DNA of 64,000 nucleotides, taken from Bugula neritina (lineage: Eukaryota; Animalia; Bryozoa). Positions 1,560-47,900 of the stretch are shown piece after piece. Within the stretch, counting starts at the first letter, position 1, and each line of letters starts with the position of its first letter. Location: assembly GCA_964035545.1 (NCBI GenBank), contig OZ037766.1, positions 32,540,773 through 32,604,772 of the forward strand, in the 5' to 3' direction. Both the position numbers and the translations under genes were made by a program. The notes below the pieces were generated by a model. It was not told the origin of the DNA. It saw nothing but the letters and a program-made list of their open reading frames with translations, and made no database searches.

Positions 1560-4500
1560 TTAGACTAGATCAGTGTCTAGCTTTCTTTGCACAGTTTTAA
1601 TTTGGTGCTCAGTTTCACAGATTATTGGATGATCTAATACTTCACATGCAAACACAAAACTTTCTTTTGCCTTTAGAAAGTGAATGAAAGCATTCTCATG
1701 CTGCTGAAGCGAGTCATACATGCTGCCCATAGATTGCAAAATTTCTCCTCTTTCTAGTGCTGCTGGTTTTGGTGAGATTCTGTCAACTCGAGCCAGCAGA
1801 GAGAGCGATTCACTATAGGCCTGTTCAGCAAGATTCACATTTCCTTGCTTCCAATGACTTAATGCTAGTTTGGCCAAAGCATTGGAAATATATCCATCTA
1901 TGTATTCTTTATTTTCTGATGCAGCAGTTTTAAACATCTCTATTGCTTTATTCAGGTAAAATTTTCCCAAATCATTCTTTCCAGTATGGACTAGATGCAA
2001 GCCATACTGCATAATCGCAGCTGCTGATTGTGCATGTGGAACTTTGTAGCGGGGTAGACTGAAGAACACTTTGACTAAGATTTTATGGAATGTTGGAGAG
2101 GTTCTTGTGGCAAAATAGTGTAGGACAGAAGCTTTGAACTTGCTTTTTTGTCCATACAACTGAATAGTCATAGTTAGGCATCGCTTTAAGTATTCCTCAG
2201 TATCTTCATGCCGTCCTAGCATTGTACATGCGCTGCCTAATGCAAACATTATGTGCGCAATGTCTCGGTGACACGCCTCACTTCCGTATTTCTCGTACAG
2301 CATCTCCTTACTTCTCTCAAAATACAAGAAAGCAAACTGATAGTACTTGGTGTAGATGTAGTTGAGTCCGATGGTCCACAAGACATGTGCAAGAATAATG
2401 GAAGGGTTGTTGAGATACTTGAGTCTGCCTTCTGGATTCTCTTTCAGAAGATCTACCAATGGTTCTACGTCTTCATCTGAGTATATTATTTCCCCATAAT
2501 AATTGTATTCAATCTCTCTCGATGCCAGAAGATGGCAAATTTCAAGGGCTTTAAAAAGATGATCCCGAGCTTCAACATACCTATACAACATGTTGTAAAC
2601 TCGTCCAATACAAAATTCTGTTTTTGCTAGCAACTCATGATTGCTTTTCAAATGCTCTTTACGAATTTTTAACGAAGATTTGTATTCCTCCACTGCTTTT
2701 GTGTAATTGATCAAACCATAATAACAATCTGCTGCTTCAGCCTTTGAATCACCCATAATGAGCTGTTGCTCCTGGAAATTTTCTGAGCCATGGCCATCCT
2801 CAATCATCCTTTGTATTGCAAGATGATATTCTAGAGCTTCTTTGTATTTCCTCTCTTCACACATAGAATAGGTTAGAGCTTTCACAGAGTTCCATACTTC
2901 TAAAAAGCCACCATGAACGATATTTTGAATATCGTGAATAACTTTTTCTGGATTAACTGTAAGCAAACTCTGACTCCCAATATGCTTTTCAAAATGGTCA
3001 GTGCCTTTAGACCAGCGATTGCAGCAGTGAAAAACTTGGAACTTTACCAACCAGTTCGGATTTTCAATTTCTCTTTTAATCATCTGCTCAATATCATCAA
3101 CTGTGCAGCTGCCAACATGCTTCTTTAATGGAACTGAATAGTCACAATGAAGGTTGAACAATGTCTGAGACAAAAACCATCTTTGCCCTGAACTCCCATC
3201 TCCTCTGATTGCTGGCTGAGTAATTTGAGAAGAGAAATAGTTTTTAGGTAAGACTGATAGCTTGTTTTCAGCCGAATCGTAGAAAAGGTATGTTGAAAGA
3301 CGCAAATAGCAAGCACATGAAAGTAGAAACTGAAGAGATTTGTGCACAGAGTTGGAAATGAGTTGCTGTTGAAAAAAAATATTCAATGTTGTCCACGAAT
3401 CCAAAGATGAGCGACTAAATATAATAGAGAGGTTGTACAGAAGAATGGAGGGGTATCGGTACAATTCTTTTTTGGTGTTGATAGAAAAGCCATTGTTTAT
3501 CAACTCCTCAGTAGGCTGGAAACCAAACTTTTTTGCATCAGAAATAAACATGTTTCTGTTGGCTCTATGCCTGTTGACATTTTTAGGTTGCAACTTATTC
3601 TTTCTTTCAACAAACTGTTTAAACAGCTCCTTGGAATTTTTTCCATGAATGTATACTAGTCTGGTATACTGCAGTTTTGCGGTGAGGTCTCCCTTAATTG
3701 AATCTTCATCTTTTGGATCATTCAAGACTTGTTCATAGCTTTCTAGAAGTTGTGAAGGAGTAGCGATAAAATGGTTTTTCTGCGCATCAGTACCATTTCC
3801 TGTGGGTATACTTCCAGCGTCTTTCTTCAATCCATCAATTTTAAAACCACTCATTTGGGCATCTTCAAACCATCTCTTTAACTCCAACACTGATAGATAC
3901 CCCAGTGGGGTTTCTGCCAGGTTGCCTATTATAAAATAGCTTGACAAAGCTAATCTTTCAAAGTAGTTGATGTTATTGGGTGTTGCTGCTTCAATTAGGA
4001 AAAGGTACTCGATATCTGAGTATGGAGTAGCTTCACCTTTAGCTAAGGAACCGAGTGCCACCACACAGAAACTACAGGGAGGCTGAGAGATCAGGCTAAT
4101 AACACTGTATTCAAAGATCATTTTTGCAAATTCAACCATTTGATTTGTGCATTCCAGTGATATCCTTTCAATTTCGGTGATAAATGTGTCAATGAACTCA
4201 AAGTTTGTTATTTTTTGTTTGTCAAGTTTGATTACAAGCTTGTCTACCTGATCAACTTGACTTCTTACCATCTCCCTAATGCATGAAAGAGTGTTTGCTA
4301 ACTTGCATGTCACGTCTTTTTGTACCTCATAGCTCCAGGCTCTATCCTCTTTCCAATACAAACTTTGAGCCTCGAAAGCCTGCTGTTTCCAGAACTCCGC
4401 ATTTTCATGACTTACTCTTACAGAAACGGAGTTATAAAGAGCATGTGCCTATAAAAGGTAAAACATACTCGATTTGGGTTATGCTGCAATATTTTATATG

Positions 4501-5905
4501 ATTAGTTGTACTTTATATACGGTAAAAGCTACAATAATTTGCTAAATTAAATTGTTAACTATCCCATCTAAAAAGCTTCATAATTAAAAAAACTCCATTT
4601 GCATAAAGCTCAATATAAAATGCAGCAATAACAAATGGGCTCTAAAGTTGCGTTTATACCTTCACAATTTTCGGTCAAAATTTCAATTTGGCCGGGTTGA
4701 AATTTCTCCGAGTTGCATTGCATTGTAAAAACCACCCGTTGAAATTTTTGTACTGTGATAACTTAATCGGCCAATTTTAGAATAGTGTTGTGAGTTTTAG
4801 CACAATTATCAAGTGTGGATTGCCTGCGTATTTAGTTTCAATTTAACTAGCAATTACTAACAGAGCTTGCGCACGATAACCTTTATTTAACTCGATAAAC
4901 ATAATTATAACATCACATCAAAATACCACAATACATCAATCAATTATAAACACATGTTACTACTACGAGCCCCTGCTCTCAACAACCCATGGTTTCTGCT
5001 AGCTAACCCGCGAACAGTCACTTGACCGGAACCTTGCCTTCCGGTCCCTCTGATTGGATAGTAAAACATAGTTATAAGTATTCCACGCAGGAGGGGACGA
5101 CCCCATTATTATGCTACGTAATCCCATTACAATAGGAGTAATTACTCGTTGTAAAAATTGTTATTTAGTTATTACTTTGGCGATTAGACAACGTACTTAT
5201 ACGGTTATAATTATATAGCCTACGCCTTCTCAATTATCGCTTTTATGCTTTCCGCTTCACGACGTTTACAAAGGGCATCAAATAGCTATTATGCGAGTCA
5301 AATTTCAATTTCAGAAAGTGAGCAACCGCATCAATATGATTTCAACGAGTTTCAGTTTGACTATAAAGAGGTACCCGGACAAGCATTATTAACTTAAACT
5401 CGGTACTTTTTTCAGCAGAGGTATAAACGCAACTTTAAAGAAATGAGAAGAGATGGTAATAGTTTAAGGTAACCCTAAACAAAGCTTCTACCTTGAGAAT
5501 ATCTGTCCAATCATCAGTTACTTTGTATTTCTCCATATACCCATTGGCTAACTTCTCCAGGTAAAGTTTAGACACCTCCAGGTTGTATTTCCCACCATGT
5601 GCACCACAATATACTTCTTTAAATGCTTTCAGCTCTTCTGGGAGCATCTACATACGTGTGTTGATAAGACGTACTATATGTTAGTATATTCCATGTTATA
5701 TCACTATTATTATATTATATTATATTATATTATATTTACTTCGCATATTGTTGCATACATATGCAATAATATTGCATGTATTGTATATATGTGGTAATAT
5801 ATAACACGCTATAATATATACTGTATATAGATAATATAATGTGATACTCTAATACATACGGCCTTTTACATTCATCAACTTACTCACCACAAACTCATCA
5901 TCCAT
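1560..5905 (-). CDS. Nucleotidyltransferase (Pol-beta fold, GlnD/DUF294-like) + TPR-repeat protein, copy A, intact, about 1020 aa, 3 coding exons
   Basis: Exons 5905-5888 (MDDEFV|gtgagt), 5647-5492 (tag|MLPEELK...DWTDILK|gtagaa) and 4448-1560 (tatag|AHALYNSV...DTDLV*) are all phase 0 and open. The 933-aa ORF call starts at an internal TTG. Motif VVALGSLAKGEATPYSDIEYLFL (about 4005-4052) fits hG[GS]x9-13Dh[DE]h. It is followed by GFKIDG, a helical INTKKELYRYP...ACYLRL segment, and TPR-like helical pairs (e.g. AVEEYKSSLKIRKEHLKSNHELLAKTEFCIGRVY). Confidence 0.85.
4646..5434. mobile_element. Non-autonomous DNA transposon (MITE), 789 bp, Kolobok-like, in intron 2 of copy A
   Basis: Perfect 16-bp TIR AGTTGCGTTTATACCT...AGGTATAAACGCAACT flanked by CTAA/TTAA. 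It is absent from the homologous intron of copy B (empty site near 14010). The superfamily is inferred only from the AG..CT termini and TTAA-like target. Confidence 0.85.
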
Positions 5906-8900
5906 TTTACTTCTGTTATTTCACAAGTTGTTAGATATAACTACTTCTGTATGGAGCTGGAGTTATCTCCCATAAGCTGCAAACATTAACAAGCTTTACT
6001 CTCCCTAGTATTTCAATTATAAAAACCTAACATGATGTATGAAATGCATGATTAGTTAGTAAATTTAGACAATAATTTAGCCTGTTACCAGCATTTACTG
6101 TTGTACATATTCACATTACCTGCGGATATAATCTAAGGCTATTAGCAATAAATAAAACTCCAGCAATATCATAACGTTTTTCACCTATAATTAACCAGTA
6201 GTCTGTCTATATGAAAGGTTTTATTAACAAACCTATCATATCTTAGAAACAGTTTAGCATCCAAAGTATAAATAGGCTCTCTATGTACAAGTTCCTAGTC
6301 TGAATTTACTCTGCTATACATCAACTTATGATCTCACCACTCCCTGACTCTTGTGTCCCCTGAGAAATAAAGCTAATATGCTGATACACAGTTGCTCATG
6401 ATTGTTGCTAGGAATTCTAATAAGAGTCATTTGTGCTTACATAGAATAAATGTTATGCACAGGATATACTTTACATGTATCTCTTATACATGATTGGAAA
6501 CAATAACATTGCTGTTCCCAGCCCCCTCCCCCAAATGTGAAATACTCTATCCTATGTTAATATTATAGTAATATTACCTTCAGAGAGATAACAGGGAAGT
6601 TAAAAACACTTGAGACGATATCCAAAATCTGATTTCATTGATGTATCCTCCACTTTGCTCTTTGAATAAGCAAGCTGATTGTCCGTTTTTACTATTCATA
6701 TTTACATACAATAACCCATAGCATATTACAATTACTGAGTGTTTTCATTTGCATCGTTTACTTTTATACCCTGTATTTTTACAAGCAGCCAGAATAACAA
6801 AGTTACTTAGTTACATAATCAAGTTTTTAATGAAGTGAATCTGTTAACACAACCACAATGGAGTTATGATTAGTGTATAGCTTATATAACAGTAGAGATT
6901 AGCAACCAAAGTGTAGCATAGGTTGTAGTCTCATTTTACCTAATAGCTTAGCTATTAGAGTGGTTAAGCTTTATCACTGAGCTGGTGTGAACATTGAACA
7001 AAGTTGTTAATTCACAGTCAGTTGAGAAGGTATTGATGCCAATTTTTACTATGTATTCTATTTTACACTTTTTAGAAACCTCTTCTAAGATGCACTTGAT
7101 AAATTTATCAGCTAATGTATTTTAGAAAGGTTTACTAATTTCTAATTTTATCGTTATATAGTGTCCAATGAATAATATTTTCAAAATATCAAATATTTAA
7201 ATTTACTCTTTTATTTAAAGTGCTAAATGCATGCACCTATACCCAACAGCTTTCACTCAGTGTATATTATAATTTATTTTAAATAAGCAACATATATAAA
7301 TAAACATTGACTTGATCATGTTCAATTCAATTTAGGTTATTGCATATACGGTGATTAGAAAAAAAGCCCATTTTTTGACAACAGTTTAATGCATAAAATT
7401 AACAGCAGCCGGTGCGTTTAGCTGAAACAGGTTGCATTTTCAGAACTAAAATACTTGCTGTGTGTATTTATTAGAAAATCGTATATTATTTGTAGAATCT
7501 TTAAACATTTGAATGGAAATAAACCTAAAAGAAACATTTAACGCTGCTTTGACTTGTGAGTGTACTACAAGATAATTTCTAAGCGTTTAAAAGCACTGGC
7601 TTTATAAACTATAGGAGATTATCTTTTCTTCATAAATCTTATTTTTAAATGCAGATCACTTGTTTCTAAAGCTCAATATTTCAATTAATAAACTTTAGCT
7701 AAAATTTTAAGGCCTTAGCACTATATCCAATCTTTTATATACACTGAAGAGACTCCGATAACAGAGCAAAATTGTATTTCTGAAAATTGAAATAACAGTT
7801 TCCAAATGAAAAGTTCAACAATGGGTCTTAATTAGAATTCTTAAAAAAAATGGAGAAAGTTGCCCTCTCAATTCTAAGTGATATGAAGAAGAGGGAATTG
7901 TTTACTCAATCTGAAATATGGCCAAGTTGTTTATGTTATATCCATTGAACTATAACCTATTATAGCTTCAGTTCAATGGTTATAGCGCGTGGAAGGGGAA
8001 ATGGAGTTATCTTCCATTGCCTTCAAGTATAATCGATTAGAAAGCATTTTATATTCTGTTAAACTCTGTTAATTTCTAAACCATGCAAAGCATTAGGCTT
8101 TCTTATTTTGGAGACCGCAAAGATCAGACTATTTTGCTATTTAAACTATCAGAGGTCATTGGGTAGGTCAAGATTATAATAAATTCGAGAAAAGCTTAAA
8201 ACCTTGTGTACAATACTTATAACTGAGTTTGCCGTTGTTTTAACTTAAAGCTGAATGTTAAGATCATTTAGCCACGACAAATGTATGGACATTATGTCAT
8301 AATATAATGCCCGATAATGTTTCTGAATACCCAGTAGATAAGAGTAATTTTTAGAAGAAGTGTATTCAACAACCCACAAACATGTTCAAATATAAATGAC
8401 CTAAAGCAAGTTGCAATGATACCAGCAAACTTTAGGATATCTAGGTGAAAGAAGCCACTTTTGTAAATCTCAAATCTTGCATACTCTAAGTAAAAATTGT
8501 GTTTTAAAAAAACTAGAATTTTAAACCCAGGAATACTGCAGTAATTAAGTTATATGAGGTTCATCAATCTACTATAGATTACTCTGCGCTTTGCGCCAAC
8601 TTAGGATGGCTTGGTTCTTCACAACTATACGTATATATAAAAGCAAAGTTGTAGTTTGACCAGAGATCAATTACAAAATAAATCAAAGCTTCATTAATTT
8701 GTTTTGGTGTAACTGTTTGTGATGGATGAATGTGATGAATATATACTATTCGCATTCCTCAGTTATAAGAAATTAATTAGCCAATATGAGAAAGCCAGAA
8801 GAAAGCCTGGTTCTATTTTATGTAATATCAACAGATGAGTTTAAGTTATGTAAAAATGTCAAAGTTCTGTGAAAATGTTTATAAAACAAAGGTAGAAGAC

Positions 8901-10923: not shown

Positions 10924-13900
10924 CTAAACAATAGTATTGTCTATTTTGCTTAGAACAGATTGAATCTGAAGCTCAGATTCACAGATTTTTGGATGAGAAG
11001 AATCATCTGAAGCAAAAACAAATTTTTCTTTTGCTCTTTGAAAGTGTATCAAAGCTGTTTCATGTTGTCCAATTGAGTCGTACATGTCGCCCAAGCTCTG
11101 AAGTACTTCTCCTACTTCTAGAGCTGCTGCCTTTGGCAAGGTTTTTTCTAAGTTGATCAACAGAGACAGCGACTCATCATATGTCTTTTCAGCAAGACTC
11201 ACATTTCCTTGCTTCCAATAACTTAATGCTAGTTTGGCCAAAGCATTGGAAATATATCCATCTACGTATTCTTTGTCTTCTGCTGTTTTTGCTACGGCCT
11301 GAAGCATTTTTATTGCCTTACTAAGTGTAAAATTTGCCAAATAATTTTTTCCAGTATGGACTAGATGTAGGCCATATTGCACAATCACAACTGCCGATTT
11401 TGCATGTGAAACTTGATAGCGAGGTAGACTGAGGAACACCACGACTAAAATGTTATGGTATGTTGGAGAGTTTTTTGCGGCAAAGTGTAAAACAGCAGCT
11501 TTGAACTTACTCTTTTGTCCATACAACTGAGTGGTCATAGTTAGGCATCGATTGAAGTATTCCTGGGTATCTTCATGTCATCCTAGCATTGTACATGCGC
11601 TGCCTAATGCGTACATTATGTGAGCAATGTCCCGGTGACATGCCTCACTTCCATATTTCTCATAGAACATCTTTTTGCTTCTCTCAAAATACAAGAAAGC
11701 AAACTGATAGTACTTGGTGTAGAGGTAGTTGAGTCCGATGGTCCACAAGACATGTGCAAGAATAATGGAAGGGTTGTTGAGATACTTGAGTCTGCCTTCT
11801 GGATTCTCTTTCAGGAGATCTACCAATGGTTCAACATTTTCATCTGAGTATACTATCTCTCCGTAATAATTGTTTTCTATTTCCTTTGATGTCCGGATGT
11901 GGCAAATTTCTAGGGCTTTGAACAGATGACCCCGAGCTTCAACATACTGATACAACATGTTGTAAACTCGTCCAATACAAAATTCTGTTTTTGCTAGCAA
12001 CTCATGATTGCTTTTCAAATGCTTTTTACGAATTTCTAACGAAGATTTGTATTCCTCCACTGCTTTTGTGTAATTGATCAGACCATAATAACAATCTGCA
12101 GCTTCAGCCTTTGAATCAGCCATAATAAGCTGTTGCCCCCGGAAATTTTCTGAGCCATGGCCATCCTCAATCATCCTTTGTATTGCAAGATGATATTCCA
12201 GAGCTTCTTTGTACTTCCTTTCTTCACACATAGAATAGGTTAGTGCTTTAACAGAGTTCCATACTTCTGAAAAGCCACCGTGAACTACGCTTTGAATTTT
12301 CCAAATAACTTTTTCTGAATTTGTAAGCAGACTCTTACTCCCAATATGCTTTTCAAAATAATCATTGCCTTTAGACCAGCGATTGCAGCAATGAAAAACT
12401 TGGAACTTTACCAACCAGTTTGGATTTTCTATTTCTTTTTTAATCATCTGCTCGATATCATCAACTGTGCAGCTGCCAACATGCTTCTTTAATGGAATTG
12501 AATAGTCACAATGGAGGTGAAACAATGTCTGAGACAAAAACCATCTTTGCCCTGAACTCACTTCTCCTTTGATTGCTGGCTGAGTAATTTGAGAAGGGAA
12601 ATAGTTTTCAGGTAAGACTGATAACTTGTTGTCAGCTGAGTTGTAGAACAGGTAAGTTGAAAGACGCAAATAGCATGCACATGAAAGTAGGAACTGCAAA
12701 AATTTGTGCACAGAGCTGGAAATGAGTTGCTGTTGAAACAAAATATTCAATGTTGTCCACGAGTCCAAAGATGAAGAGCTAAATATAATAGAGAGGTTGT
12801 ACAGAAGAATGGAGGGGTATCGGTATAATTCTTTTTTGGTGTTGATAGAAAAGCCATTGTTTATCAACTCCTCAGTTGGAAACCAAACTTTTTTGCATCA
12901 GAAACGAACATTTTTTTATTGGCCCTATGCCTTTTGACATTTTTAGGCTGCAACATATTTTTTCTTTCAACAAACTCTTTAAGCAGCTTGTCTGCATCTT
13001 TTCCATGACTGTATATTAGCCTGGTATACTGCAGTTTTGCTGTGAGGTCTCCCCTAATGGAATCCTTCTTTTTTGGATTATTCAAGACTCGTTCATAGCT
13101 TTCTAAAAGCTGTGAAGGAGTAGCGATAAAATGGTTTTTCTGCACATCAGTACCATTTCCTGTGGGTATACTTCCAGCGTCTTTCTTCAATCCATCAATT
13201 TTAAAACCACTCATTTGGGCATCTTCAAACCATCTCTTTAGCTCCAACACTGATAAATACCCCAGTGGGGTTTCTGCCAGGTTGCCTATTATAAAATAGC
13301 TTGACAAAGCCAATCTCTCAAAGTAGGTGATGTTATCGGGTGTTGCTGTTTCGATTAAGAAAAGGTACTCAATATCTGAGTACGGAGTAGCTTCACCTTT
13401 AGCCAAAGAACCGAGCGCCACCACACAGAACCTACAGGGAGGCTGAGAGATCAGGCTAATAACACTGTATTCAAAGATCGTTTTTGCAAATTCAACCATT
13501 TGCTCTGTGCATTCCAGTGATATCCTTTCAATTTCGGTGATAAATGTGTCAGTGAACTCAAAGTTTGTTATCTTTTCTTTGTCAAGTTTGATTACAAGCT
13601 TGTCTACTTTATCAACTTGACATTTTACCTTCTCCCTAATTTGTGAAAGAGTGTTTGCTAACTTGCATGTTATGTCTTTTTGTACTTCATAGCTCCAGGC
13701 TCTATCCTCTTTCCAATATAAACTTTGAGCCTTGAAAGCTTTCTGTTTCCAGAACTCCGCGTTTTCTTGGTCTACTCTTACAGAAACTGAGTTATAAAGA
13801 GCATGTGCCTATAAAAGGTAACACGTATTTGATTTGCATTATGCTGCAATGTTTTATACGATGTAGTTGTACTTTATATACCATAAAAGCTACAATAATT

Positions 13901-14467
13901 TGCTAAATTAAATTGTAAACTATCCCATCTATGAAAAGCTTCATAATTAGAGAAATTTCATTTGCATAAAGCTCAATATAAAATGTATGCATGCAGCAGT
14001 AACAAATGAGCTCCAGAAGAAATGAGAAGACATGGTAATAGTTGAAGGTAACCCTAAACAAAGCTTCTATACCTTGAGTATATCTGTCCAATCATCAGTT
14101 ACTTTGTATTTCTCTAGATACCCATTGGCTAACTTCTCTAGGTAAGGTTTAGACACTTCCAGGTTGTATTTCCCACCATGTGCACCACAGTAAGCTTCTT
14201 TAAATGCTTTCAGCTCTTCTGGGAGCATCTACACACGTGGGTTAATAAGACATACTATATATTAGTTATATATTCCATGTTATATCACTGCTATATTATA
14301 CACGTACTATGTTATATTGTTACATGCATATGCGATAATATTGGATGTATTGTATGTGGTAATATATAACAGACTATATATACTGTATATAGATATTATA
14401 ATGTGATATTCTAATACATACGGCCTTTTAAATTCATCAACTTACTTACCACAAACTCATCATCCAT
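10924..14467 (-). pseudogene. NTase + TPR protein, copy B, disrupted (4-nt deletion frameshift and premature TGA)
   Basis: Same exon structure as copy A: 14467-14450, 14228-14073, 13808-10924. AGGC (copy A 3513-3516) is missing at 12876/12877, and copy A CGG(Arg) corresponds to TGA at 11580-11578. This explains the three ORF fragments 12864-13499, 11578-12867 and 10924-11538. Confidence 0.85.
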
Positions 14468-15238
14468 TTTCCTTTCTGTTATTTCACAAGTTGTTGTATA
14501 TAACTACTTCTGGAGTTGGAGTTATCTCCCATAAGCTGCAAACATTAAACTTTACTCTCTGTATTACTTCAATTATAAAAACCCAAGATGATGTACGAAA
14601 TGTATGATTAGTTAGTAAAGTTGTACAATTATATAGCCTGTCAACTTATGATCTCACCACTCACTGACTCTAGTGTCCCCTGAGAAATAAAGCTAATATG
14701 CTGATACACAGTTGCTCATGATTGTTGCTAGGCATTTTTTTGAGAGCAATTTGTGCTTACATATAATAAATGTTATGCACAGGATATAGTTTATCTCTAC
14801 TCCATTGGAAACAATAAAATTGTTGTTCCCAACCCCCTCCCTCAAGTATGAAATAATCTATCCTATGTTAATATAGTAATATTACCTTCAGAGAGATAAC
14901 AGGGAAGTTAAATGCACTTAAGTAGATATAATACACAATATGATTTCACTAAGTTTATTGATATACCCTCCACTTTTCTCTTTGAATAAGCAAGCTGATT
15001 GTTCGTTTGTTTACTATTCATATTTACATACAATAACCCATAGCATATGACATTCATTACCAAGTGTTTGCATTTGCATGGTTTACTTTTATACCCTGTA
15101 TTTTTACAGGCAGCCAGAATAACCAAGTTGCTCAGTTACATAATCAAGTTTTTAATGAAGTAAATCTGTTAACCCACCTACAATGAAGTTATGATTAGTG
15201 TTTAGCTTGTATAACAGTAGAGATTAGCAACCAAAGTG
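14468..15238. repeat. Duplicated upstream/5' flank of the NTase-TPR genes (paralogous to 5906-6913)
   Basis: Co-linear near-identical sequence ending at GATTAGCAACCAAAGTG in both copies; copy B lacks about 6085-6320. Confidence 0.9.
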
Positions 15239-15892: not shown

Positions 15893-16050
15893 AAACAACC
15901 ATGAGTAACTGTGTATCAGCATATTAGCTTTATTTCTCAGAGGACACAAGAGTAAGTGAGCGGTGAGATCATAAGGTGATGTATCAGAATAAATTCAGAC
16001 AAGGAACTTGTACATAGAGAGCCTATTTAAACTTTGGATGCTAAACTGTT
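15893..16050 (+). repeat. Inverted copy of part of the NTase-TPR 5' flank
   Basis: Reverse complement of about 6248-6408 (e.g. GTGTATCAGCATATTAGCTTTATTTCTCAG; GGAACTTGTACATAGAGAGCCTATTT). Confidence 0.85.
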
Positions 16051-27000: not shown

Positions 27001-29351
27001 AACAAACATTGCGGCAGTCTCAAATTTATTTAGTCAATCAGATTTTATATTTAGAAATTAGTTGATTTGTAATGCAATTGTTTTTATTGAAAGTTCAGTC
27101 AATTCCATGTGTCACATTGTCATGTTTTGTATCTATTGTCATGTTTTGTGTCTATTGGTTGGTTTTATAGAGGACAGAGGTGTGTCTGCGGGCAGGCAAC
27201 TCCTACTGGTTGTACTTTGCCTCACATTCGGTATAGAAGTTGGGTACAAGCTGTCGACTAGTACCGTCATATGGCTGTCTAACCCCTGCCACCTGCTAAC
27301 CATCTGTCAAGTGAGTCATATTATACTGAAGTTAGCAATCCCCTGTGGTGTAAAGGAGTTGTGTGCTCTTGTTTTTTCTGTATTGCATATTATATATTAC
27401 TGTAAACTCTAGAACTCAATGTGGTGTTGTAACTGTAGTTAGCAACAGATTAGGTTGGTTAGAGTTACCAAAGTAGTCAAGACCAAACAGAGAACAGCTA
27501 GGTTACTGTTTAGGACTTGCAAATAATTATGTCATAGTTTCAAGTCAAAATCTTATTATTGTAATATATTACATTAGCATAATCTCCTTAGTTATTGCTG
27601 ATGTTGAATTGGGGAAATGTTTAGTCTCTACTCTCTCGTTTATGTAACATTCTTCTCTTACCTTGGTGTTACCTGGATGTTACCTCAGCAGTGTGGAGTT
27701 GTCCACTAAACTACTAGACTAAGGGAATACTGCTAAGAGAGTATGAGTAATGTAAAAGTTCAACTTCTATTGGAGTTGTTTTCTTCTAATGTTTAACTGT
27801 AACCGTATCGCTACTGTTGGTTTGTGTTTTCAGAATAAGCTGCAGGTTACACTTTATCTCACTTTGTTTCAGATCATCCTTCTAGCTGCCCCGCCCAGGA
27901 AGTGGGTGACTGTGTTGTTCCGTATTGTGATGCATTCTTTACACGGCGCCATGGTGGCCCTTCTGCTTCCTGTTACTAACACTAGAATGGTACGTACACT
28001 AGTTAGCCCTAGTTCTATACACTAGAATGGTACGTGTGCTAGCTAGCCCTAGTTCTATGCACTAGAATGGTACGTATACTAGCTAGCCCTAGTTCTATGC
28101 ACTAGAATGGTACGTATACTAGCTAGCCCTAGTTCTATACACTAGAATGGTACGTACACTAGCTAGCCCTAGTTCTACACACTAGAATGGTACGTACACT
28201 AGCTAGCCCTAGTTCTACACACTAGAATGGTACGTACACTAGCTAGCCCTAGTTCTACACACTAGAATGGTACGTATGCTAGCAGACCCTCTTGTCTAAT
28301 GCTGATGCTGTTTGTGTTTCAGTTGTCATTCGAGATTGGCGTGTACTGGATTCAGCACATACTCATTATAGCTATTCCATTTTTCCTTCTCTACCAAGGA
28401 GGTGAGTGGCTTCCCTTCAGTGTTTTTATTGTATAGTCAGCATAAAGCTCTGTCAGCCTAAGTGCCTGCTTCTAGATGTGCCAGACCCGGTGATGGTGAT
28501 GGAATTGTTAAAGATCTCAAGCTAAAACTGAAGACATCATTTGCAATGATCTCTCTGCCCGCATGTTTGACCCTGTAGCATACTGTTGGAGTCGGTGTGA
28601 CATAATAGAATATGTGAAATGTATTTCAACATTGAGGTGTCTGGAATAAAACTGTTGGGTTTAGAGATTGTTATGATTCTAATTGGTAGTAAGTTGGGAA
28701 TTCTGCTGTCTTCACCTTTCACTGTGTTCACTCTGATAGAATGTGATCTAGCATTGTACTATATAAACTGTGTTTTATAGGGCCGTATGTGGCTGAGCCC
28801 CTCAAAGATATGATGTGGCCAGTTATGTCCCTTGGCATTCTCTACTTTATATACTGGATCCCTGTGCAGTTACTGTGTATTGTAAGTATTGTACAGTTAC
28901 TGTGTATTGTAAGTATTGTACAGTTACTGTGTATTGTAAGTATTGTGTACCTGTACAGTTACTGTGTATAGTAAGTACTGTACAGTTACTGTGTATTGTA
29001 AGTATTGTACAGTTCTGTGTATTGTAAGTATTATACAGTTCTGTGTATTGTAAGTATTGTACAGTTACTGTGTACTGTAAGTACTGAATATTTCCTTTCT
29101 ACTTACAGCTGACGGAAGTGAACCTGAATAACATGGTATGCCCAGCCATATCTGACCCTTTCTACGGCAGAGGTTATCGTCTCTGGGCAATGGGGCATTG
29201 TGGGATATGCATACTCGGCTTTGGCAAACTCTACACCTGCATTTCTCTGCAGGTCATTCAGAGGTTGAAGCGTGGGGGAGCTTCAAGTATGGGAAATGGT
29301 GTCAGTCACGGAGGCTCCTTGCAGAATGGAGTCGATCAAAAATCTCAATAG
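24100..29351 (+). CDS. TMEM164: Transmembrane protein 164, about 301 aa, 7 coding exons
   Basis: Exons 24100-24159, 25494-25659, 27171-27310, 27873-27989, 28323-28401, 28781-28881 and 29109-29351 splice in frame. Motifs [43 protein letters not shown] and [19 protein letters not shown] match TMEM164. Confidence 0.95.
24393..24567. repeat. 44-bp minisatellite, 4 copies
   Basis: Unit AGAGTTACTCAACTAGTACCCAGTATACTGACTATACTGTTAGT. Confidence 0.9.
24848..24963. repeat. 16-17-bp minisatellite, about 7 copies
   Basis: Unit CACCTGAG(G)GCTTAGTA. Confidence 0.9.
27981..28282. repeat. 40-bp minisatellite, about 7.5 copies, containing the TMEM164 exon-4 donor
   Basis: Units start at 27981, 28021 ... 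28261: ACTAGAATG|GTACGTACACTAGCTAGCCCTAGTTCTACAC. Confidence 0.95.
28867..29086. repeat. About 27-bp minisatellite, about 8 copies, containing the TMEM164 exon-6 donor
   Basis: Unit CAGTTACTGTGTATT|GTAAGTATTGTA. Confidence 0.95.
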
Positions 29352-38901: not shown

Positions 38902-41900
38902 ATGGCGGCATGGAGGCAAAAACAATGGAAATACAAAAACACGACCCCAAAGATACTAAAAAAGGAGGTTTGTCTTACAATTAACCAATTTTAGCCCTTC
39001 AAAAATCACTAAAATTTTCTGCACAAGTTGTATTCAGTGCTGCAATATGCAAACAGGAGTGACCATATCAGTGGTAAAACAGTACTCAATCAGTAATGAG
39101 TACATGAATCTGTTTAGGGATGATTTCTTTGTGTGGTCATTGTTACTATTATGCACTTGAAACCGTTGATTTTTCAATCAAGTTTTCTGTACTATATCAG
39201 ATATCTAGTAATGACACACCTACATCAGCTAATAAGTCACCACTTTGTTGCCCTATCTAAGGAAATGCTGTTTCCCTTTCCAACACAATGTCACATTTCC
39301 TGTTGAGATACTTCCTGAATTGTATATGAAATATCTGCTCCATCATTGCCCTACGACTGAGTGCGGAGATGTGACACGATGGGACATATTGTGACATGAT
39401 GTGACATGTGCTTGCAGGAGTGTATCACAGGCCTGTCAGCCAGTAGACTCATGCAGACAGCTGGTAACTACATCCGGGCTAGCTCCAAGTACATGGTTTT
39501 CAACATAGACGGACACGGTGAGCAGACTGTAGCCTAGTTTCTCTTCACATCCTGTCTTAGTAAACATATCTATGCAGTTGCTAGACTACAGGCCAACTAT
39601 TCAGCTGCTACAAAACTGGGAAGGGGAAGTTTATATAATATAGCAATGTAAGCTACAGAAATGGAATTGGTTTTGCAGTTGAATAAAAATGTTGGTGCAA
39701 CAATAAGCGGTGGTTTTGGTTTATTACTCCCTGACAATTATTAATAGTTTTCTGTGAAGTACTTACAGGAGCTTAAGTAGCTTTAGCAATCAACTTTTTA
39801 GATATCTTTTATCTGCCAAATTTCTATACTGTATGCAATAACTTGCTTCAGTTACTAGGCCTGTGTTTAAAAGCTGGACTTTGCCTGTTGGGAATTTGTA
39901 ACCTTCAACTGTACCATTCTTATCTTCCATATGAGGTAGTTAAACACCTCCCCCATCCCACAGTGAGATAAGGGGCCTCAGGCTGTTGACATCTCTACTA
40001 CTCATTCTACTAGTCAGTCTACTAGTCACTCTACTACTAACTGTACTAGTAAAGTTTCTAGTAGAGTGACAGTCACTGAACTTCTAATAGTCAATAATGT
40101 CCACCTGCTGTCTTCAACTCTGCCACTCTCTCTTTCAACCACCTCCCAATTGGTTGAAAGTTCATTTCTCTTCGACTAGCGGCTATTATTTTCAAGTACA
40201 GCTGCTGCTGCCGCTGTTGCTGCTGCTGTTGCTGCCGCTGCAGCTGTGACTTTCAGGAATAGAATAATATAGTAACACATAAGGAAATAGTATAATGCTG
40301 GCTGGTGTTGAAGATGGCCACTGACTCATAGCAATGGAAGGCTGGACAATTATATTCACACTTATACTGGTTGTGTACCTCCATGTTATTGTGTAGTTGG
40401 TCATACTAAAGTCTAAACCTATATGTTTGCTGTGGGGTAGCTTCACACTTTTATACTATTCACACTGGCATATATGATTATATTACCTGGTATATTACCT
40501 TGTATATTACCTGGTGTATTACCTGGTATATTACCTGTTGTATTACCTGGTATGTTACCTGGTGTATTACCTGGTGTATTACCTGGTGTATTACCTGGTA
40601 TATTACCTGGTGTATTACCTGGTACATCACCTGGTGTATTATGTGGTTGTTGTGTTTTGTAGGGGGTGGGTGTCTAGGAGTCCTTCCTCTCAGCACTACA
40701 GGACATATCAGCTCTAATCTGCCCCTCATCTATGCCCACGGCAGTAAGTTATACACATTCACTGAATCCTTCCAGAATCTTCCATACCAGCTCACTACTA
40801 GCGCTCCTCACCACTCCGCAATGTCTTGTAGATTTTGTGTCCGACTTTGGGTTCTCCCCCCACGACGATAGCCTTCTGGCCACCACCTCCTTTGACAATC
40901 ACATAAAGTTGTGGAGGCTGCCGGACGTGCCCGTCCTGACGGCCCCGAGTGCCCCTGAGTCTGAGTTCCCAGAGCTGCCCCGCAGAGGGGACGCCCTCAG
41001 CTGGAACCCCCTTGTTAGCAGTCTCATGTACGTCGTGGCCGGTAACCTGCTGAGGCTATACGATGTCAGAACCACGACTAAAATGTTCGGTAAGTGTAAC
41101 CTGTGTTCCCTCAGTGTGAGATTGCCTGAGTTCTAGAATATTGCTAGTGAGTAGGGGAGGGTGTACACCCTCTCTCATTACAACACTCTTGTACCCGCAG
41201 AGTTTGACGATCAGGAGGAGGTAATTCAGGGAGCCTGCTGGTCGCTAGATGGCTCTCACATAGTCACTTCCTCTAAGGATCTGCTGGTTAGACTGTTTGA
41301 CCCCCGGGCTAACTCTTCAGCTGCCTTGCAGGTAGGCTAAGTTCTCTTATATGTGCTGAGTTGTTGGGAGGGGGGGAGCTTTAAACCTTTACTTTCTACT
41401 ATTCAAATAGTTCTTCAAGCATGTTGACTATTTTTTGCAATTTTTTCTCTAAATTCATATAAACTTCGCAAAATAATATGAAAAGTTATCATATGAAATA
41501 TAATTGTATTTGAAAATTTATGTTTTGAATTTGTTCCTTTCAATTTTCTTTGACTAATTGATATGTAGCCATTCTTAGAGATACTACAGAGTTTAGTATA
41601 GAGATATACTACAGAGTTTAGGTTAGAGATACTACAGAGTATAGGTAAGAGATACTACAGAGTTTAGGTTAGATATACTATACAGTTTAGGTTAGAGATA
41701 CTACAGAGTTTAGGTTAGAGATACTACAGAGTATAGAGATACTACAGAGTATAGGTAAGAGATACTACAGAGTTTAGATTAGAGATACTACAGAGTTTAG
41801 GTTAGATATACTATACAGTTTAGGTTAGAGATACTACAGAGTTTAAAGATACTATGCAGTTTAGGTTATATGGTGATATTGTAGAGCTGTCCTGGTCATG

Positions 41901-44900
41901 AAGTTGTGAATGATTCCCGTATAATTTATGTGAATGATAATCGTATCATCACCACTGGATTCTGCTCGGTGAGTATTTCCTGTTTCGTGGAATGCGTTTT
42001 GTTTTTAATCTAATAAAATGAACTAACAATGAAATGAATTATATAATGCAGTGTGTTGTATTACATTATATTGTATTACATTATATTATATTGTATTACA
42101 TTATATTGTATTACATTATATTGTATTACATTATATTGTATTACATTATATTGTATTACATTATATTGTATTACATTATATTGTATTACAATCATACTTT
42201 AGGACTACATTACCAATAACCAGGGTCGTGTGGTATGTAACACATACCTATGGAGGTGTAGCACACTTTGGTATATTAGTCATAACTTTCACGTCACAAA
42301 ATTAATAATTCTGTGTCCTGTGTGTAATTACAGGATAGGAGTCGTCGGGCCCTGATATATGATACGAGGAACCTCTCTGGTGCTCTGGATAATGTAGATT
42401 TTGATAGTAGCCATGGGTACGTTTTTCTGTTATATATTCATTACACGTGTCCGCTGTTGTGATCAGACAATGCTTATGTTATCATATATATGCTATTATC
42501 ATATATATGCTATTATCATATCTATGCTATTATCATATATATGCTATTATCATGTCTATGTTATTACTATAGATATGCTATTATCATAATTATCTATGTT
42601 ATTATTACATCTATGCTGTTATCATATCTATGCTATTACTATAGATATGCTATTATCATATCTATGCTATTACTATAGATATGCTATTATCATATCTATG
42701 CTATTACTATAGATATGCTATTATCATATATATGCTATTATTATATCTATGCTATATCTATGATATACAGTGACATGTTTTATAATTACCAGAATTCTGG
42801 TCCCTCTGTTTGACCAAGACACGAATATGCTCTACGCGTATGGCAGGGGAGACAATAATGTGAGATTTCTGGAGTCGACAAGCAAAGCACCATATCTGGT
42901 TCAAGGTAGAGCTTCTTTAGTGTTACTAGTCATTGTGTACATTATAATACTGTGAGAGCTGTGATGGTTAACACATACAACTATTCTTACAGTGTCAAGT
43001 GTCTTAGAGTTGATATTGCGAGTTGTGTGAGTCTTAGCATGCTGGGGGGGGGGGGGTGTACAAGCGCTTTGTATGACATGAAGTTTGCCAAACCTCCTAA
43101 ATCTATTGCCTAACTTTTTAAAGTTGCAAGCTCAATAGCTCTCTGTCATGCAAACTTCTTTCGATAATACCTCAGTTTTGCTCTTTGTGAAACATGGCCG
43201 ATGTTTACAAGCTCTACTCCTGATTTCTTCATGCTTTATTCTGGTTTGAACATAATATTTAAGACTCCATTGCCAGGGTAGAAAGCTTATTAATTTTGTC
43301 CCTGTAGCCCCTCTCCGTCTCATGAATATAAATATTTAGTTTATTACAACGTTTGCTGTGTTTGCTAAACTCTATGTGGAAGCTGACACTTTTACTCTGA
43401 ATTTAATGTGAAGTTGTCTCCCCTATACTGTTGCTGTGAGGAGTTGTCTCTCCTATACTGTTACTGTGAGGAGTTGTCTCTCCTATACTGTTACTGTAAG
43501 AAGTTGTCTCCCTTATACTGTTACTGTGAGGAGTTGTCTCTTCTATACTGTTAATGTGAGGAGTTGTCTCTCCTATACTGTTACTGTGAGGAGTTGTCTC
43601 CCTTATACTGTTACTGTGAGGAGTTGTCTCTTCTATACTGTTAATGTGAGGAGTTATCTCCCCTATACCGTTATTGTAAGGAGTTGTCTCCCTTATACTT
43701 GTATACTGTTAATGTGAGGAGTTGTCTCCCCTATACTGTTACTGTGAGGAGTTGTCTCTCCTATACTGTTACTGTGAAGAGTTGTCTCTCCTATATTGTT
43801 ACTGGAAGGAGTTGTCTCTCCTATACTGTTACTGTGAGGAGTTGTCTCTCCTATATTGTTACTGGAAGAAGTTGTTTTCCTTTCAGCTGCCTGTGATCTG
43901 CTGAAGTCACAAGTGAAGGGGGCGTGTCTTGTACCGAAAACAGCGGTAGACGTGATGAAGGGAGAAGTGAACAGAATGTTGGTGCTGAGCAAAGATAGCG
44001 TTGTTCCTGTACCCTACATCATACCGCGACGGGTGAGTGTTTGGGTTGCCGGTGTTCACACATGAGTATATATTGCTAGGACCTGTTCACACATGAGTAT
44101 ATATTGCTAGGACGTGTTCACACATGAGTATATATTGCTAGGGCGTGTTCACACATGAGTATATATTGCTAGGGCGTGTTCACACATGAATATATATTGC
44201 TAGGACATGTTTACACATGAGTATATACATGCTCAAAGTCGTAGTTTAAGTATGGTTTACTTGAAGTTGATCACTTCTGTAATATATTATTATTTCATTA
44301 TCTCGTTTCAGTCGTATGCTGAGTTTCACTCCGATGTCTTCCCTGACACTTATTCTGGAGAGCCAGGATGTGATGTCGATGCCTGGTTGACTGGAGCTGC
44401 CCCACAGGTACGTCGCTGTTGCGGCTGCAGCCGCTGTATAACATGCATACTACTGTATAACCTGTATAATATGCATACTACTGTATAACCCCTATAATAT
44501 GCATACTACTTTAAAGCCGTATAATAATTTCCAGATCGTCAAAGTTAGTTTGGATCCTGCAAAGTCTGGTAAGAAATCGGATCCAGTGGAAGCTAAGGCT
44601 ATCAAAGTGGAGGCACAGCCTGTCGCACACAAAACTGCAGTAAGCACTTCCAACGGGACTTCTGGCGACGCCCCCACCCCAGCTAAACCCGTGGAGTTTA
44701 AACCTAAGGCTGTAGCAAAGGTTGCTAAACCAGTCGTAGCCACTAGCAATGTGAGTTGAATGATTTTAGCTCATTTCTGGCCTCTCTTTGGCGTTATCTG
44801 ACTCAAGGTGACTTACAAATGCCTCAAAATAAAGGATGTTGAATATAAGACTTCCTGTCACAGAACTTAATGCGGCTAACCTGTTCTTTCAACTCAACTT

Positions 44901-47900
44901 ATTCCTACTGAAGGGCTAAAATAGCAATGAATCTGTTTCGATATATCAATAAGTACCATAGCCTGTACATGTAGTGTAGACCGTAGGTGTGTTAGTTAAT
45001 AAACCTGTATACTGTCTGTATATACACAGGTATCGCCTGTCTCGCAGGTATCGCCTGTCTCGCAGGTAGAGAAAGAAGACCACTCTACTCAGACTACACC
45101 AGTAAGACATCGGGAGCCGAGCACACAGGACACGTCTGCACGACAATCTCAGCTGTTCAAATGTAAGTACTTGGTGATGAGCTAACAATGTATTGCTACT
45201 GGTGACTTCTCATCTACTCCTCTACGTTATACTATTCTGTCAAAGTTGTCCCCACATGTTGATAGAATGTATTGTACGTACGCTCTATTCTCTGTGAATC
45301 ACGCTGTCACAACTAGCTTCATGCACACTGGAGATGCACTCCGAGTGAAACGTTTAATCACTTTAGCTCTACACATCAAATTATTTGTAAAAAGTCGGAA
45401 GATAAACTCCTGAGGCAAATACATGATATATTAATGGACTGTAAAGTTAATATTGTTAGATGGTTTCACTCACTGGTCTTCTTTCATTGTGCTAGAAAGT
45501 TAACTTCCAGATCTTACACGCACTAAAACTGTGGCACTCTGTTGACACCTCCCTCTCTTTTGTGTAAATCACCTTCAAGTGTTGTGGTGACAAGTCTGTT
45601 CTTATTAAATGTACAAATACCATAAGACTAAAATTAGTATTTGCTGCCATTCAATGGCTGACTCTATCTTAAGGTCTCAGAATAACGTCTTGTCATATGG
45701 TGTTGGCAGCAAACAACTTGCTATACTTCTCAAAGCAGCGGTAAAATTTGCTTGTCTAAGCATGTTTTTTATGATTGTTTTATTAGAAGTGTTGATGAAG
45801 AGTTGCAAAGTTTAATCTTGTGTATATATTGCCTAGCAACTTGTGTACATATAACCTAGCAACTTGTTTACATGTAGCCAAGCAACTTGTTTACATGTAA
45901 CCTAGCAACTTGCGTACATATAACCTAGCAACTTGTTTACATGTTGCCTAGCAACTTGTATACATATAACCTAGCAACTTGTTTATATGTAGCCTAGCAA
46001 CTTCTGTACATGTCACTCATCAAGTTCTGTCTGTGCTTGATCAATAGCTGAAATACATATAGCCCAGTGACCTGTTATATAGTTTAACGGGGCGTGTACA
46101 GTTTTCTTCCTAAGTATATCTGAATACTAATGCTATAATATTTAGTTGGATCTGCTGTATGTAAAACAGAAAATTCATGTTGATATGTTAATTGTGTCAC
46201 TTAGCAACAGAAACACAAACAATAAAGCCATTAGTTTGGCCTCACTTATGCCGCAGGCATCCTGGTATGTTGAAATCTCTCACATAATGTTATTATAATA
46301 GTACTTTCAGCAAAACAAGAGTTGGTGAAGTTCGTTTTCATCAAACATTTGATTATGTAATATCCTGTCTTTTCGCACGTATACAAAGCATATAGCTTGT
46401 TGCTATTATAATAACATTTTGTATCAAATTTATTTTCTCTCAGATGATTGAATGGAGTTTAACTTTCTCTGAGACTATCTTAATGGTGAATCGGTCAACT
46501 ATAACATGACACTTTGTAAAACCAACTTCTGGGTTTTGTGTTTAAATACCGCTGTTATTACAGTGCGGATAAGTTGTGTATTTCTACGGGAAGTTACATG
46601 AAGCCGAAGCAATATGACGTAACGCCGTGTCATGTTATAGTTGGCCAATGGACCCTGCTTTCACCGTATCAGGCTCTGAATATCTCATACTTTGTCCGTC
46701 TCTCTACTAACTGCTCCCTGTAGTCTTACTCGCTCTTTCGTATCTTCAGCTACTGGTTAGTGGTAACATCTACGCTGGGGTCATAACCTCATATATGCTG
46801 GACATTAGAACAACTCTGCTGTAGATATTTTCTCTTTCGTTGGTATTCAGCTATACAAAACAAAATACAAAATAGATACGGTGTGAATTCATTTGAGTAT
46901 ATAATTGATATAAAGTAGTTTTTATTACACCTACACTCATTACACCTACACCCATTACACCTACACTCATTACACCTACACTCATTATACCTACACTCAT
47001 TACACCTACATTCATTATACCTACACTCATTACACCTACATTCATTACACCTCCACTCATTATACCTACACTCATTATACCTACACTCATTATACCTACA
47101 CTCATTATACCTACATTCATTACATTGTAGTTTTACGGCTAGTTCAATGCTAAGGTCCTTGATTCATGAAATCTCACCCCCTCATCCGCAGTGGGCACTT
47201 TCAGCTCCCCTATTCCGGGTGACTTGTTATCCACCTTTTATGAGATGAGCTACTGAGGAATCCCCTAGCCTTTGTGTGATGTCATGCTCAATATTTCATT
47301 CATATCTTGTGAACTGAGAAATGCATTCATATGGACTTGCAGCTAATTAATTGTGAAATTTCAGTTGAAGAGTTATCTGCTACTGTTCATTGTATAGATG
47401 TGTGTTAATCAATGTACATGGGTTTAGTAATCAATTTAATTCTGTAGCATTCAGTCAATAGACGGAACCGAAAGCACCCACTTCACTATATTCGCTAGCC
47501 ATTTGTGTGACATGTCCCTTTGATTCCCTTCTCTGTACATCTAACACACCATAAGCTATTTATACTGTCATTCCCATCTATTCGTGTGTCTGTCTGTGTG
47601 TCCCTTTGTTGGCAGCATGTCTCATGCTTTCTGTCATGTGACTACTTGCTCTCAGTCACATCACATGTCATGCAGTAGAAAACATTAAACTAGCATTCAA
47701 ATTCAGTCACATGCTCTCCCGTGTCACATGCTATCACATGTCACATGGTTAGTGTGTCACATGCTATCACATGTCACATGCTTAGTGTGTCACATGCTAT
47801 CACATGTCACATGCTATCACATGTCACATGCTTAGTGTGTCTCATGCTATCACATGTCACATGGTTAGTGTGTCACATGCTATCACATGTCACATGGTTA

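What the first reader, a model, noticed from the sequence alone, without database searches (positions are those of the whole stretch)
1560..5905. Animal GlnD/DUF294-like nucleotidyltransferase fused to a TPR array: candidate undescribed sensor-enzyme system
Seen: an intact gene of about 1020 aa with a complete Pol-beta NTase signature (GSLAKGEATPYSDIE, with a candidate third acid in GFKIDG), a helical segment (INTKKELYR...ACYLRL) placed like the substrate-binding domain of GlnD/GlnE/DUF294 enzymes, then about 400 aa of TPRs. Established: Pol-beta NTases include protein uridylyl/adenylyl-transferases (GlnD/GlnE) and second-messenger synthases (cGAS, OAS, CD-NTases), and TPR arrays act as ligand sensors in immune proteins. 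It does not read like cGAS/Mab21, OAS, PAP or TUTase. Inference: a TPR-gated protein NMPylase or nucleotide-signal synthase, possibly in innate immunity or host-symbiont conflict. Function cannot be shown from sequence.
Basis: partly seen in the sequence, partly recalled or inferred. Interest (0 to 1): 0.88.

Follow-up and report, generated by a model that had tools for sequence, protein, structure and literature searches.

The report
Bryozoan DrrA-like enzyme–TPR gene family
This is one intact member of a family of about 60 genes in a bryozoan-like marine animal, each joining an enzyme shaped like the Legionella protein-tagging effector DrrA to a protein-binding repeat array; if the enzyme is active it would be a kind of animal protein-tagging enzyme that has not been described, probably used in defence.

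Summary
Observation confirmed. A minus-strand gene with three coding exons (5905-5888, 5647-5492, 4448-1560; 6+52+962 = 1020 aa) encodes a Pol-beta nucleotidyltransferase (GS-x10-D-x-E plus an invariant third Asp), a HEPN-like helical domain lacking the RNase motif, and about 450 aa of TPRs. The enzyme module folds like the Legionella DrrA/SidM AMPylase (Z 24.4) and E. coli GlnE (Z 21-22), not like cGAS, OAS or TUTases. The genome holds about 64 loci on 9 contigs (53 with long open frames). They sit in tandem clusters under purifying selection, show recombination, and vary in TPR length. All 38 fetched copies with an enzyme domain keep the three acids. A broken copy lies at 10924-14468. Homologues with the same layout occur in other bryozoans, in amphioxus (some with CARD) and in intracellular bacteria (the published Neochlamydia NEX2 family). 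Best reading: a cytosolic protein NMPylase (probably AMPylase) aimed or gated by its TPRs, in host-microbe conflict. Activity, substrate, expression and origin are untested, and DrrA's fourth acid (D249) is Ser/Thr here. I found no paper on the animal family. The scan already noted it on other DNA of this genome (s1-456718, s1-456761).

The parts
5888..5905 (-). Coding exon 1 (ATG + 5 codons), followed by GT donor
   Evidence: same exon and donor in the second copy
5492..5647 (-). Coding exon 2 (52 aa N-terminal segment, no Pfam match)
   Evidence: conserved in 15 other paralog loci and in Watersipora XP_067950244.1 residues 17-63
1560..4448 (-). Coding exon 3 (962 aa + stop): enzyme module and TPR array
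3579..4337 (-). N-terminal helices and Pol-beta NTase core (exon-3 residues ~38-290), DUF294/SidM_N-like
   Evidence: Pfam DUF294; profile hit to DrrA 6yx5 E 3.5e-8; structure Z 24.4 to DrrA, 22.5/21.4 to GlnE domains
4008..4052 (-). Catalytic signature G133-S134-x10-D145-x-E147 (equivalent to DrrA G98-S99...D110-x-D112)
   Evidence: kept in 38 of 38 fetched own copies
3831..3848 (-). GFKIDG with D205, candidate third acid (probable equivalent of DrrA D150; equivalence inferred from spacing and conservation)
   Evidence: invariant in A1; Asp in 43/47 bryozoan-clade, 17/17 amphioxus, 27/27 bacterial domains
3099..3578 (-). Helical HEPN-like substrate-binding domain (residues ~291-450) with conserved K326, R331, R383, Y387; no conserved RNase Rx4-6H motif
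   Evidence: Z 12.7 to DrrA 212-339, Z 9-10 to HEPN proteins
1563..2918 (-). TPR array (residues ~511-961, about 9-10 helix pairs)
   Evidence: Pfam TPR_12/TPR_10; secondary structure; LGN/APPBP2/Rap-like superhelix
10924..14468 (-). Tandem paralog, 89% identical, same three exons, broken by a 4-bp deletion near 12876 and a premature stop at 11578-11580

Best explanation
The gene is one intact member of a bryozoan birth-and-death family of cytosolic DrrA/GlnE-type protein nucleotidyltransferases. The NTase core (three acids binding Mg-NTP) together with the HEPN-like helical domain most likely transfers NMP (most likely AMP) to a hydroxyl side chain of a target protein. The C-terminal TPR superhelix binds a protein or peptide and either presents it to the active site or switches the enzyme on. 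Different paralogs carry different, recombining TPR arrays on a conserved enzyme, as expected for recognition modules in host-microbe conflict. Shown: gene structure, fold, motif conservation, copy number, purifying selection, recombination, relatives. Inferred: catalysis, protein substrate, choice of ATP, TPR role, immune role.
For: Only protein NMPylases score high structurally: DrrA Z 24.4 (rmsd 3.9, 294 aligned), GlnE domains Z 22.5 and 21.4. Aminoglycoside NTases score Z <8. CD-NTase, OAS and TUT have Foldseek E >0.1. The profile's best PDB hit is DrrA (E 3.5e-8), with a second stretch in the helical domain; 47/78 members match Pfam SidM_N. The three acids are kept in 38/38 own copies and nearly all homologues; NTase dN/dS is 0.12-0.23. 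About 64 loci in tandem clusters with pseudogenes, open frames 861-2267 aa. Mosaic paralogs, PHI-like test p=0.0005 in two clusters. Amphioxus members fused to CARD. A bacterial relative has the NLR-like order NTase-NB-ARC-TPR. Named bacterial relatives are mostly host-associated or intracellular lineages. No transmembrane segment (max 19-residue hydropathy 1.5).
Against: No activity is known for any member of this clade, and I found no paper with DUF294 and AMPylase together. The position matching DrrA D249, a further metal ligand according to PMC8097203, is Ser/Thr in all bryozoan-clade and amphioxus sequences but mostly Asp in the bacterial relatives. The second acid is Glu rather than Asp. 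Identity to DrrA is only 15%. TPR dN/dS is 0.12-0.37 by region, so there is no region-wide positive selection. Expression was not checked.
Confidence: 0.55

Rival explanations
1. TPR-gated synthase of a diffusible nucleotide signal (cyclic or linear oligonucleotide), analogous to cGAS-like receptors or CD-NTases.
For: Pol-beta fold with intact acids; sensor-like repeats; NLR-like and CARD-fused relatives; bacterial DUF294 proteins, the nearest Atlas families, have no shown substrate.
Against: Fold far from CD-NTase, OAS and HalB (Foldseek E >0.1; Z about 6.5 for HalB) and close to protein NMPylases. No receptor gene was seen beside it in the window.
Confidence: 0.13
2. Protein NMPylase, but in a non-immune role (self/non-self colony recognition, control of a resident symbiont, or cell regulation).
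For: Same structural evidence as the best explanation; purifying selection on the TPRs; some paralogs have orthologue-like partners in Watersipora, so subfamilies are old.
Against: Tandem expansion, pseudogenes, recombination and variable repeat number are typical of conflict genes; CARD fusions in amphioxus.
Confidence: 0.15
3. Reverse or other chemistry: a de-AMPylase like the GlnE N-terminal domain, or a small-molecule or nucleic-acid nucleotidyltransferase (for example detoxifying microbial metabolites).
For: The GlnE adenylyl-removing domain 1v4a scores almost as well as DrrA (Z 22.5; Foldseek rank 1); the D249-equivalent is absent.
Against: Kanamycin-type enzymes score Z <8. A 450-1700 aa TPR array points to protein partners. 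The sequence profile favours DrrA.
Confidence: 0.1
4. Catalytically dead scaffold: a nucleotide-binding pseudo-enzyme plus TPR adaptor.
For: Ser/Thr at the D249-equivalent position.
Against: All three core acids and the GS motif are kept across 38 paralogs, amphioxus and bacteria under dN/dS of about 0.1-0.2.
Confidence: 0.07

Closest known systems
Legionella pneumophila DrrA/SidM N-terminal AMPylase domain (PDB 6yx5; Pfam SidM_N PF20879)
   Same: Whole NTase + HEPN-like module superposes (Z 24.4-25.0); GS-x10-D-x-D/E motif; a third acid at similar spacing; conserved K and R in the helical domain (PMC7815794).
   Different: 15% identity; Glu for D112; Ser/Thr at the D249-equivalent; TPR array instead of GEF and P4M domains; a spliced host gene in about 60 copies, not a secreted bacterial effector; no Rab1 link tested.
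E. coli GlnE (GS-ATase) domains and GlnD
   Same: Same two-domain module (1v4a Z 22.5, 3k7d Z 21.4); weak TIGR01693 GlnD hit (E 0.003).
   Different: Single module; no HD/ACT domains or second module; far below the equivalog cut-offs (16 vs 519 bits); TPR fusion.
Neochlamydia NEX2 family (F-box/OTU-DUF294-TPR; PMC4209131) and DUF294-TPR proteins of Rickettsiaceae, Holosporaceae, Amoebophilaceae
   Same: DUF294 followed by TPRs, lineage-specific expansion, shared TPYSD[LI]E / GET / GxxxD / P motifs. An F-box-DUF294-TPR homologue was recovered on a bacterial contig.
   Different: No F-box or OTU; animal, intron-containing; the bryozoan sequences form their own long-branched clade (SH-aLRT 100). 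NEX2 activity is itself untested. Named Neochlamydia NEX2 proteins were not compared directly.
Amphioxus 'Protein-PII uridylyltransferase N-terminal domain-containing' TPR proteins (automatic UniProt/RefSeq names)
   Same: Homologous domain with TPRs; large expansion (the best 120 of 865 hits are almost all Branchiostoma).
   Different: Separate clade; often TPRs on both sides, tandem enzyme modules, or CARD-FN3 or CUB/tectonin fusions. No functional paper found.

Membership tests
Pol-beta nucleotidyltransferase superfamily | GS-x10/11-[DE]-x-[DE] motif on the Pol-beta core fold | tested here: met
   G133-S134...D145-I-E147; fold matches
Pol-beta nucleotidyltransferase superfamily | Third acid co-located with the first two | tested here: inconclusive
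   D205 nearly invariant, spaced like DrrA D150; model coordinates not available for a distance check
DUF294 (PF03445) + DUF294_C (PF10335) | DUF294 domain at Pfam cut-off | tested here: met
   21.5 bits vs cut-off 21 on the domain alone; 72/78 members hit; 20 bits, just under, on the whole exon
DUF294 (PF03445) + DUF294_C (PF10335) | DUF294_C substrate-binding domain | tested here: inconclusive
   No Pfam hit in this protein; hits in 3/78 members and in amphioxus homologues; structural match to HEPN-like domains and TM 0.69-0.70 to DUF294/DUF294_C clusters
Canonical bacterial CBS-DUF294 proteins | cNMP-binding/CBS domains N-terminal to DUF294 | tested here: not met
   No such domains
DrrA/SidM | AMPylase module fold | tested here: met
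   Z 24.4; profile E 3.5e-8
DrrA/SidM | Acid ligands D110, D112, D150, D249 | tested here: inconclusive
   D/E/D present; the D249-equivalent (from a weak alignment stretch) is Ser/Thr
DrrA/SidM | GEF and P4M domains; SidM_N above cut-off | tested here: not met
   TPRs instead; SidM_N 13.5 bits vs cut-off 27
DrrA/SidM | AMP transfer to a Rab tyrosine | not testable with these tools
   needs assay
GlnD/GlnE equivalogs | Full-length match above NCBIfam cut-off, HD/ACT domains or doubled module | tested here: not met
   TIGR01693 16 bits vs 519
NEX2 (Neochlamydia) | DUF294 followed by C-terminal TPRs | tested here: met
NEX2 (Neochlamydia) | N-terminal F-box (+/- OTU), chlamydial host | tested here: not met
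   no F-box hit in exons 2-3; animal gene with introns
cGAS/Mab21, OAS, CD-NTase, TUTase/PAP | Family fold or Pfam match | tested here: not met
   no Pfam hit; Foldseek E >0.1
Active HEPN RNases | Conserved Rx4-6H motif | tested here: not met
   R383 conserved but His not (Y390 here; H in 11/47 bryozoan-clade rows)

The most novel reading that the evidence does not exclude
Bryozoans and amphioxus use a large, recombining family of TPR-gated, DrrA-type protein AMPylases, shared with or taken from intracellular bacteria, as intracellular immune receptors that tag a microbial or host protein after recognition. This would be a class of animal AMPylase beyond FICD and SelO, and a receptor-enzyme immune system parallel to NLRs.
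Probability: 0.3. Interest if true: 0.9.

Novelty: new variant of a known kind. Interest (0 to 1): 0.72.

Why it matters
A 2021 review states that only Fic enzymes and SelO are known metazoan AMPylases (PMC8097203). Here an animal genome keeps more than 50 apparently intact genes whose enzyme module is closest to DrrA and GlnE. One recombinant assay would test whether animals have a Pol-beta-type protein AMPylase. The family would also give a handle on intracellular immunity in bryozoans and amphioxus and on the unexplained DUF294-TPR effectors of Chlamydiae, Rickettsiales and Amoebophilaceae.

Tried and rejected
Contaminating symbiont DNA: rejected. The gene has canonical introns conserved in paralogs, lies on a contig of more than 32 Mb among coronin-7-like and sushi-domain genes, and has copies on 9 large contigs. 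Single-copy housekeeping orthology: rejected. cGAS/OAS/TUTase/CD-NTase: rejected by fold. Active HEPN RNase: motif not conserved. PADLOC: only marginal motif hits. Two independent transfers into bryozoans and amphioxus: suggested by the first quick tree but not supported, since a tree with all animals together was not rejected and scored higher (p-AU 0.85). The trees are quick and unrooted (the careful runs did not finish), so origin and direction remain open. Positive selection on TPRs: not seen at region level; no site model was run. Ten literature searches found no paper on the animal family. The exons were concatenated once in a local script to check the frame (with the exon 3 boundary one base off) and that string was sent to no tool.
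Full report
Observation. On the minus strand there are three coding exons: 5905-5888 (6 codons), 5647-5492 (52 codons) and 4448-1560 (962 codons plus stop). All have GT/AG boundaries and phase 0, giving 1020 aa. Exon 2 is conserved upstream of 15 other paralog loci. It also aligns to residues 17-63 of the RefSeq Watersipora subatra protein XP_067950244.1 (1030 aa), where it is followed directly by the equivalent of the exon 3 start. The quoted motifs are present (exon-3 numbering; add 58 for the full protein): G133-S134...D145-I-E147, D205 in GFKIDG, INTKKELYR and ACYLRL. Pfam gives DUF294 at the cut-off (21.5 vs 21 bits on the domain alone) and several TPR families. All searches were made exon by exon by reference; the joined model was not searched.

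Organism. The genome is 216 Mb in 321 contigs. The closest named homologues are from Watersipora subatra and Bugula neritina. Own paralogs are 87-94% identical to proteins from JGI metagenome contigs. One of those contigs carries the label AY690838, which I recall as the B. neritina mitochondrial accession (memory, not checked). A cheilostome bryozoan, probably Bugula, is therefore an inference.

Fold. AlphaFold models are confident (pLDDT 92 and 94). The enzyme module (residues 50-450) matches the AMPylase domain of Legionella DrrA/SidM (6yx5, Z 24.4, rmsd 3.9, 294 aligned) and both domains of E. coli GlnE (Z 22.5 and 21.4). The next unrelated entries are HEPN domains at Z about 10, which match only residues about 295-450. 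Foldseek agrees: only GlnE and DrrA pass E 0.001, and CD-NTase, OAS1, TUT7 and aminoglycoside NTases have E above 0.1. By sequence, the family profile's best PDB hit is DrrA (E 3.5e-8), and 47 of 78 members match Pfam SidM_N. DrrA uses G98-S99...D110-x-D112 and D150 (PMC7815794), and a review adds D249 as a metal ligand (PMC8097203). D145, E147 and D205 are kept in 38 of 38 fetched own copies with an enzyme domain and in nearly all of 100 domains from bryozoans, amphioxus and bacteria. E179, K326, R331, R383 and Y387 are likewise conserved. The position that a weak alignment stretch matches to D249 is Ser/Thr in all animal rows but mostly Asp in bacterial rows, which is the main caveat on activity. 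The helical domain lacks a conserved HEPN RNase motif, as reported for GlnD/GlnE/DUF294_C domains (PMC3710099). Residues about 511-961 form a TPR superhelix resembling peptide-binding TPR proteins such as LGN, APPBP2 and Rap. There is no transmembrane segment.

Family. The own genome gives 57 full-domain matches, 53 of them in stop-free frames of 861-2267 aa, and about 7 broken loci, on 9 contigs (lower bounds). This gene is one of six copies within about 80 kb. The next copy in the window (14468-10924) is 89% identical, has the same exons, and is broken by a 4-bp deletion near 12876 and a stop at 11578-11580. Length differences between subfamilies lie in the TPR part. Among close paralogs dN/dS is below 0.5 in every region (NTase 0.12-0.23; TPR 0.12-0.37; N-terminal helices 0.26-0.47), so the genes are under purifying selection and the TPRs show no region-wide positive selection. 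Paralogs are mosaics: nearest neighbours change along the gene and a PHI-like test gives p=0.0005 in two separate clusters.

Relatives. Amphioxus has a large parallel expansion, including CARD-FN3 and CUB/tectonin fusions and tandem enzyme modules. An Atlas cluster suggests ciliate members (lead only). In 185,579 prokaryote genomes a strict motif scan found 44 loci. Those with informative names are from Rickettsiaceae, Holosporaceae, Amoebophilaceae/Cytophagales and Chlamydiae; several are unnamed MAGs. The five tested carry TPRs after the enzyme, and one has the NLR-like order NTase-NB-ARC-TPR. An F-box-DUF294-TPR homologue lies on a bacterial contig. That is the layout of the NEX2 family of putative effectors in Neochlamydia (PMC4209131). 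In quick maximum-likelihood trees the bryozoan-type sequences and the amphioxus sequences each form a fully supported group. Animal monophyly is not rejected (p-AU 0.85). The patchy range is compatible with horizontal exchange with intracellular bacteria, but number and direction of transfers are not shown.

Mechanism. The most likely reading (0.55) is a cytosolic protein NMPylase, probably an AMPylase, whose TPR array binds a protein or peptide and aims or switches on the enzyme, in host-microbe conflict. The enzyme step rests on the fact that every close structural relative with a known reaction transfers or removes NMP on a protein, and on conservation of the acids. The immune step rests on birth-and-death evolution, recombination, CARD and NB-ARC fusions in relatives, and the effector role proposed for the bacterial relatives. 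Neither step is shown. Rivals are a non-immune NMPylase (0.15), a nucleotide-signal synthase (0.13), a reverse or small-molecule enzyme (0.10) and a pseudo-enzyme (0.07).

Known versus new. It works most like DrrA/GlnE but is not a member of either: it fails the domain-architecture tests and the score cut-offs. It is a borderline DUF294 member and shares the NEX2 layout without the F-box. Animal members have only automatic names such as 'Protein-PII uridylyltransferase N-terminal domain-containing protein' or 'TTC28-like'. Ten literature searches found no description of the animal family (the library is incomplete). A 2021 review lists only Fic enzymes and SelO as metazoan AMPylases. I class it as a new variant of a known kind, interest 0.72. 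The scan had already noted this family on two other pieces of the same genome. I reached the DrrA reading before that look-up. My tests agree with the copy number and fold in s1-456718, but do not support a 'fast-evolving' TPR groove at region level.

Not done.

Noticed in passing
window 10924-14468 (-): Broken tandem copy of the gene; its 3' TPR part is closest to paralog L003 while parts of its 5' end are closest to this gene, a sign of recombination.
   Followed up: yes
window ~4642-5438: About 800 bp in intron 2 that the second copy lacks; possibly an insertion.
   Followed up: no
window ~40700-51100 (+): Exons with WD40 and DUF1899 hits, consistent with a coronin-7-like gene.
   Followed up: partly
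window ~55400-61000 (-): Sushi-domain exon, and a Thr/Ser-rich mucin-like exon with a 33-bp repeat ending in a hydrophobic stretch: probably a single-pass surface protein.
   Followed up: partly
window ~27060-27410 (+): Exon that reads like TMEM164 from memory; no Pfam hit.
   Followed up: partly
window 17300-63900: Very many short intronic tandem repeats (93 TRF rows in the window), e.g. a 17-bp unit x27 at 58512-58974 that produces spurious ORFs.
   Followed up: no
window 6248-6406 and 15894-16050: 159-bp inverted copy (92%) of sequence upstream of the gene, upstream of the second copy.
   Followed up: no
L054 (Gammaproteobacteria MAG OZ257147.1), also L055, L056, L062, L070: Expanded ~1870-aa proteins; L054 has DUF294-NB-ARC-DUF7779-TPR, an NLR-like layout with this enzyme in the effector position.
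   Followed up: partly
P0330, P0345 (Branchiostoma): CARD-FN3 at the N-terminus of family members; P0239 has CUB, tectonin and LDLa domains.
   Followed up: partly
P0222-P0229 (ENA ERZ21736675 and others, L091): A distinct long-branched clade of DUF294-TPR proteins on gene-sparse megabase contigs, possibly another eukaryote lineage; organism not identified.
   Followed up: partly
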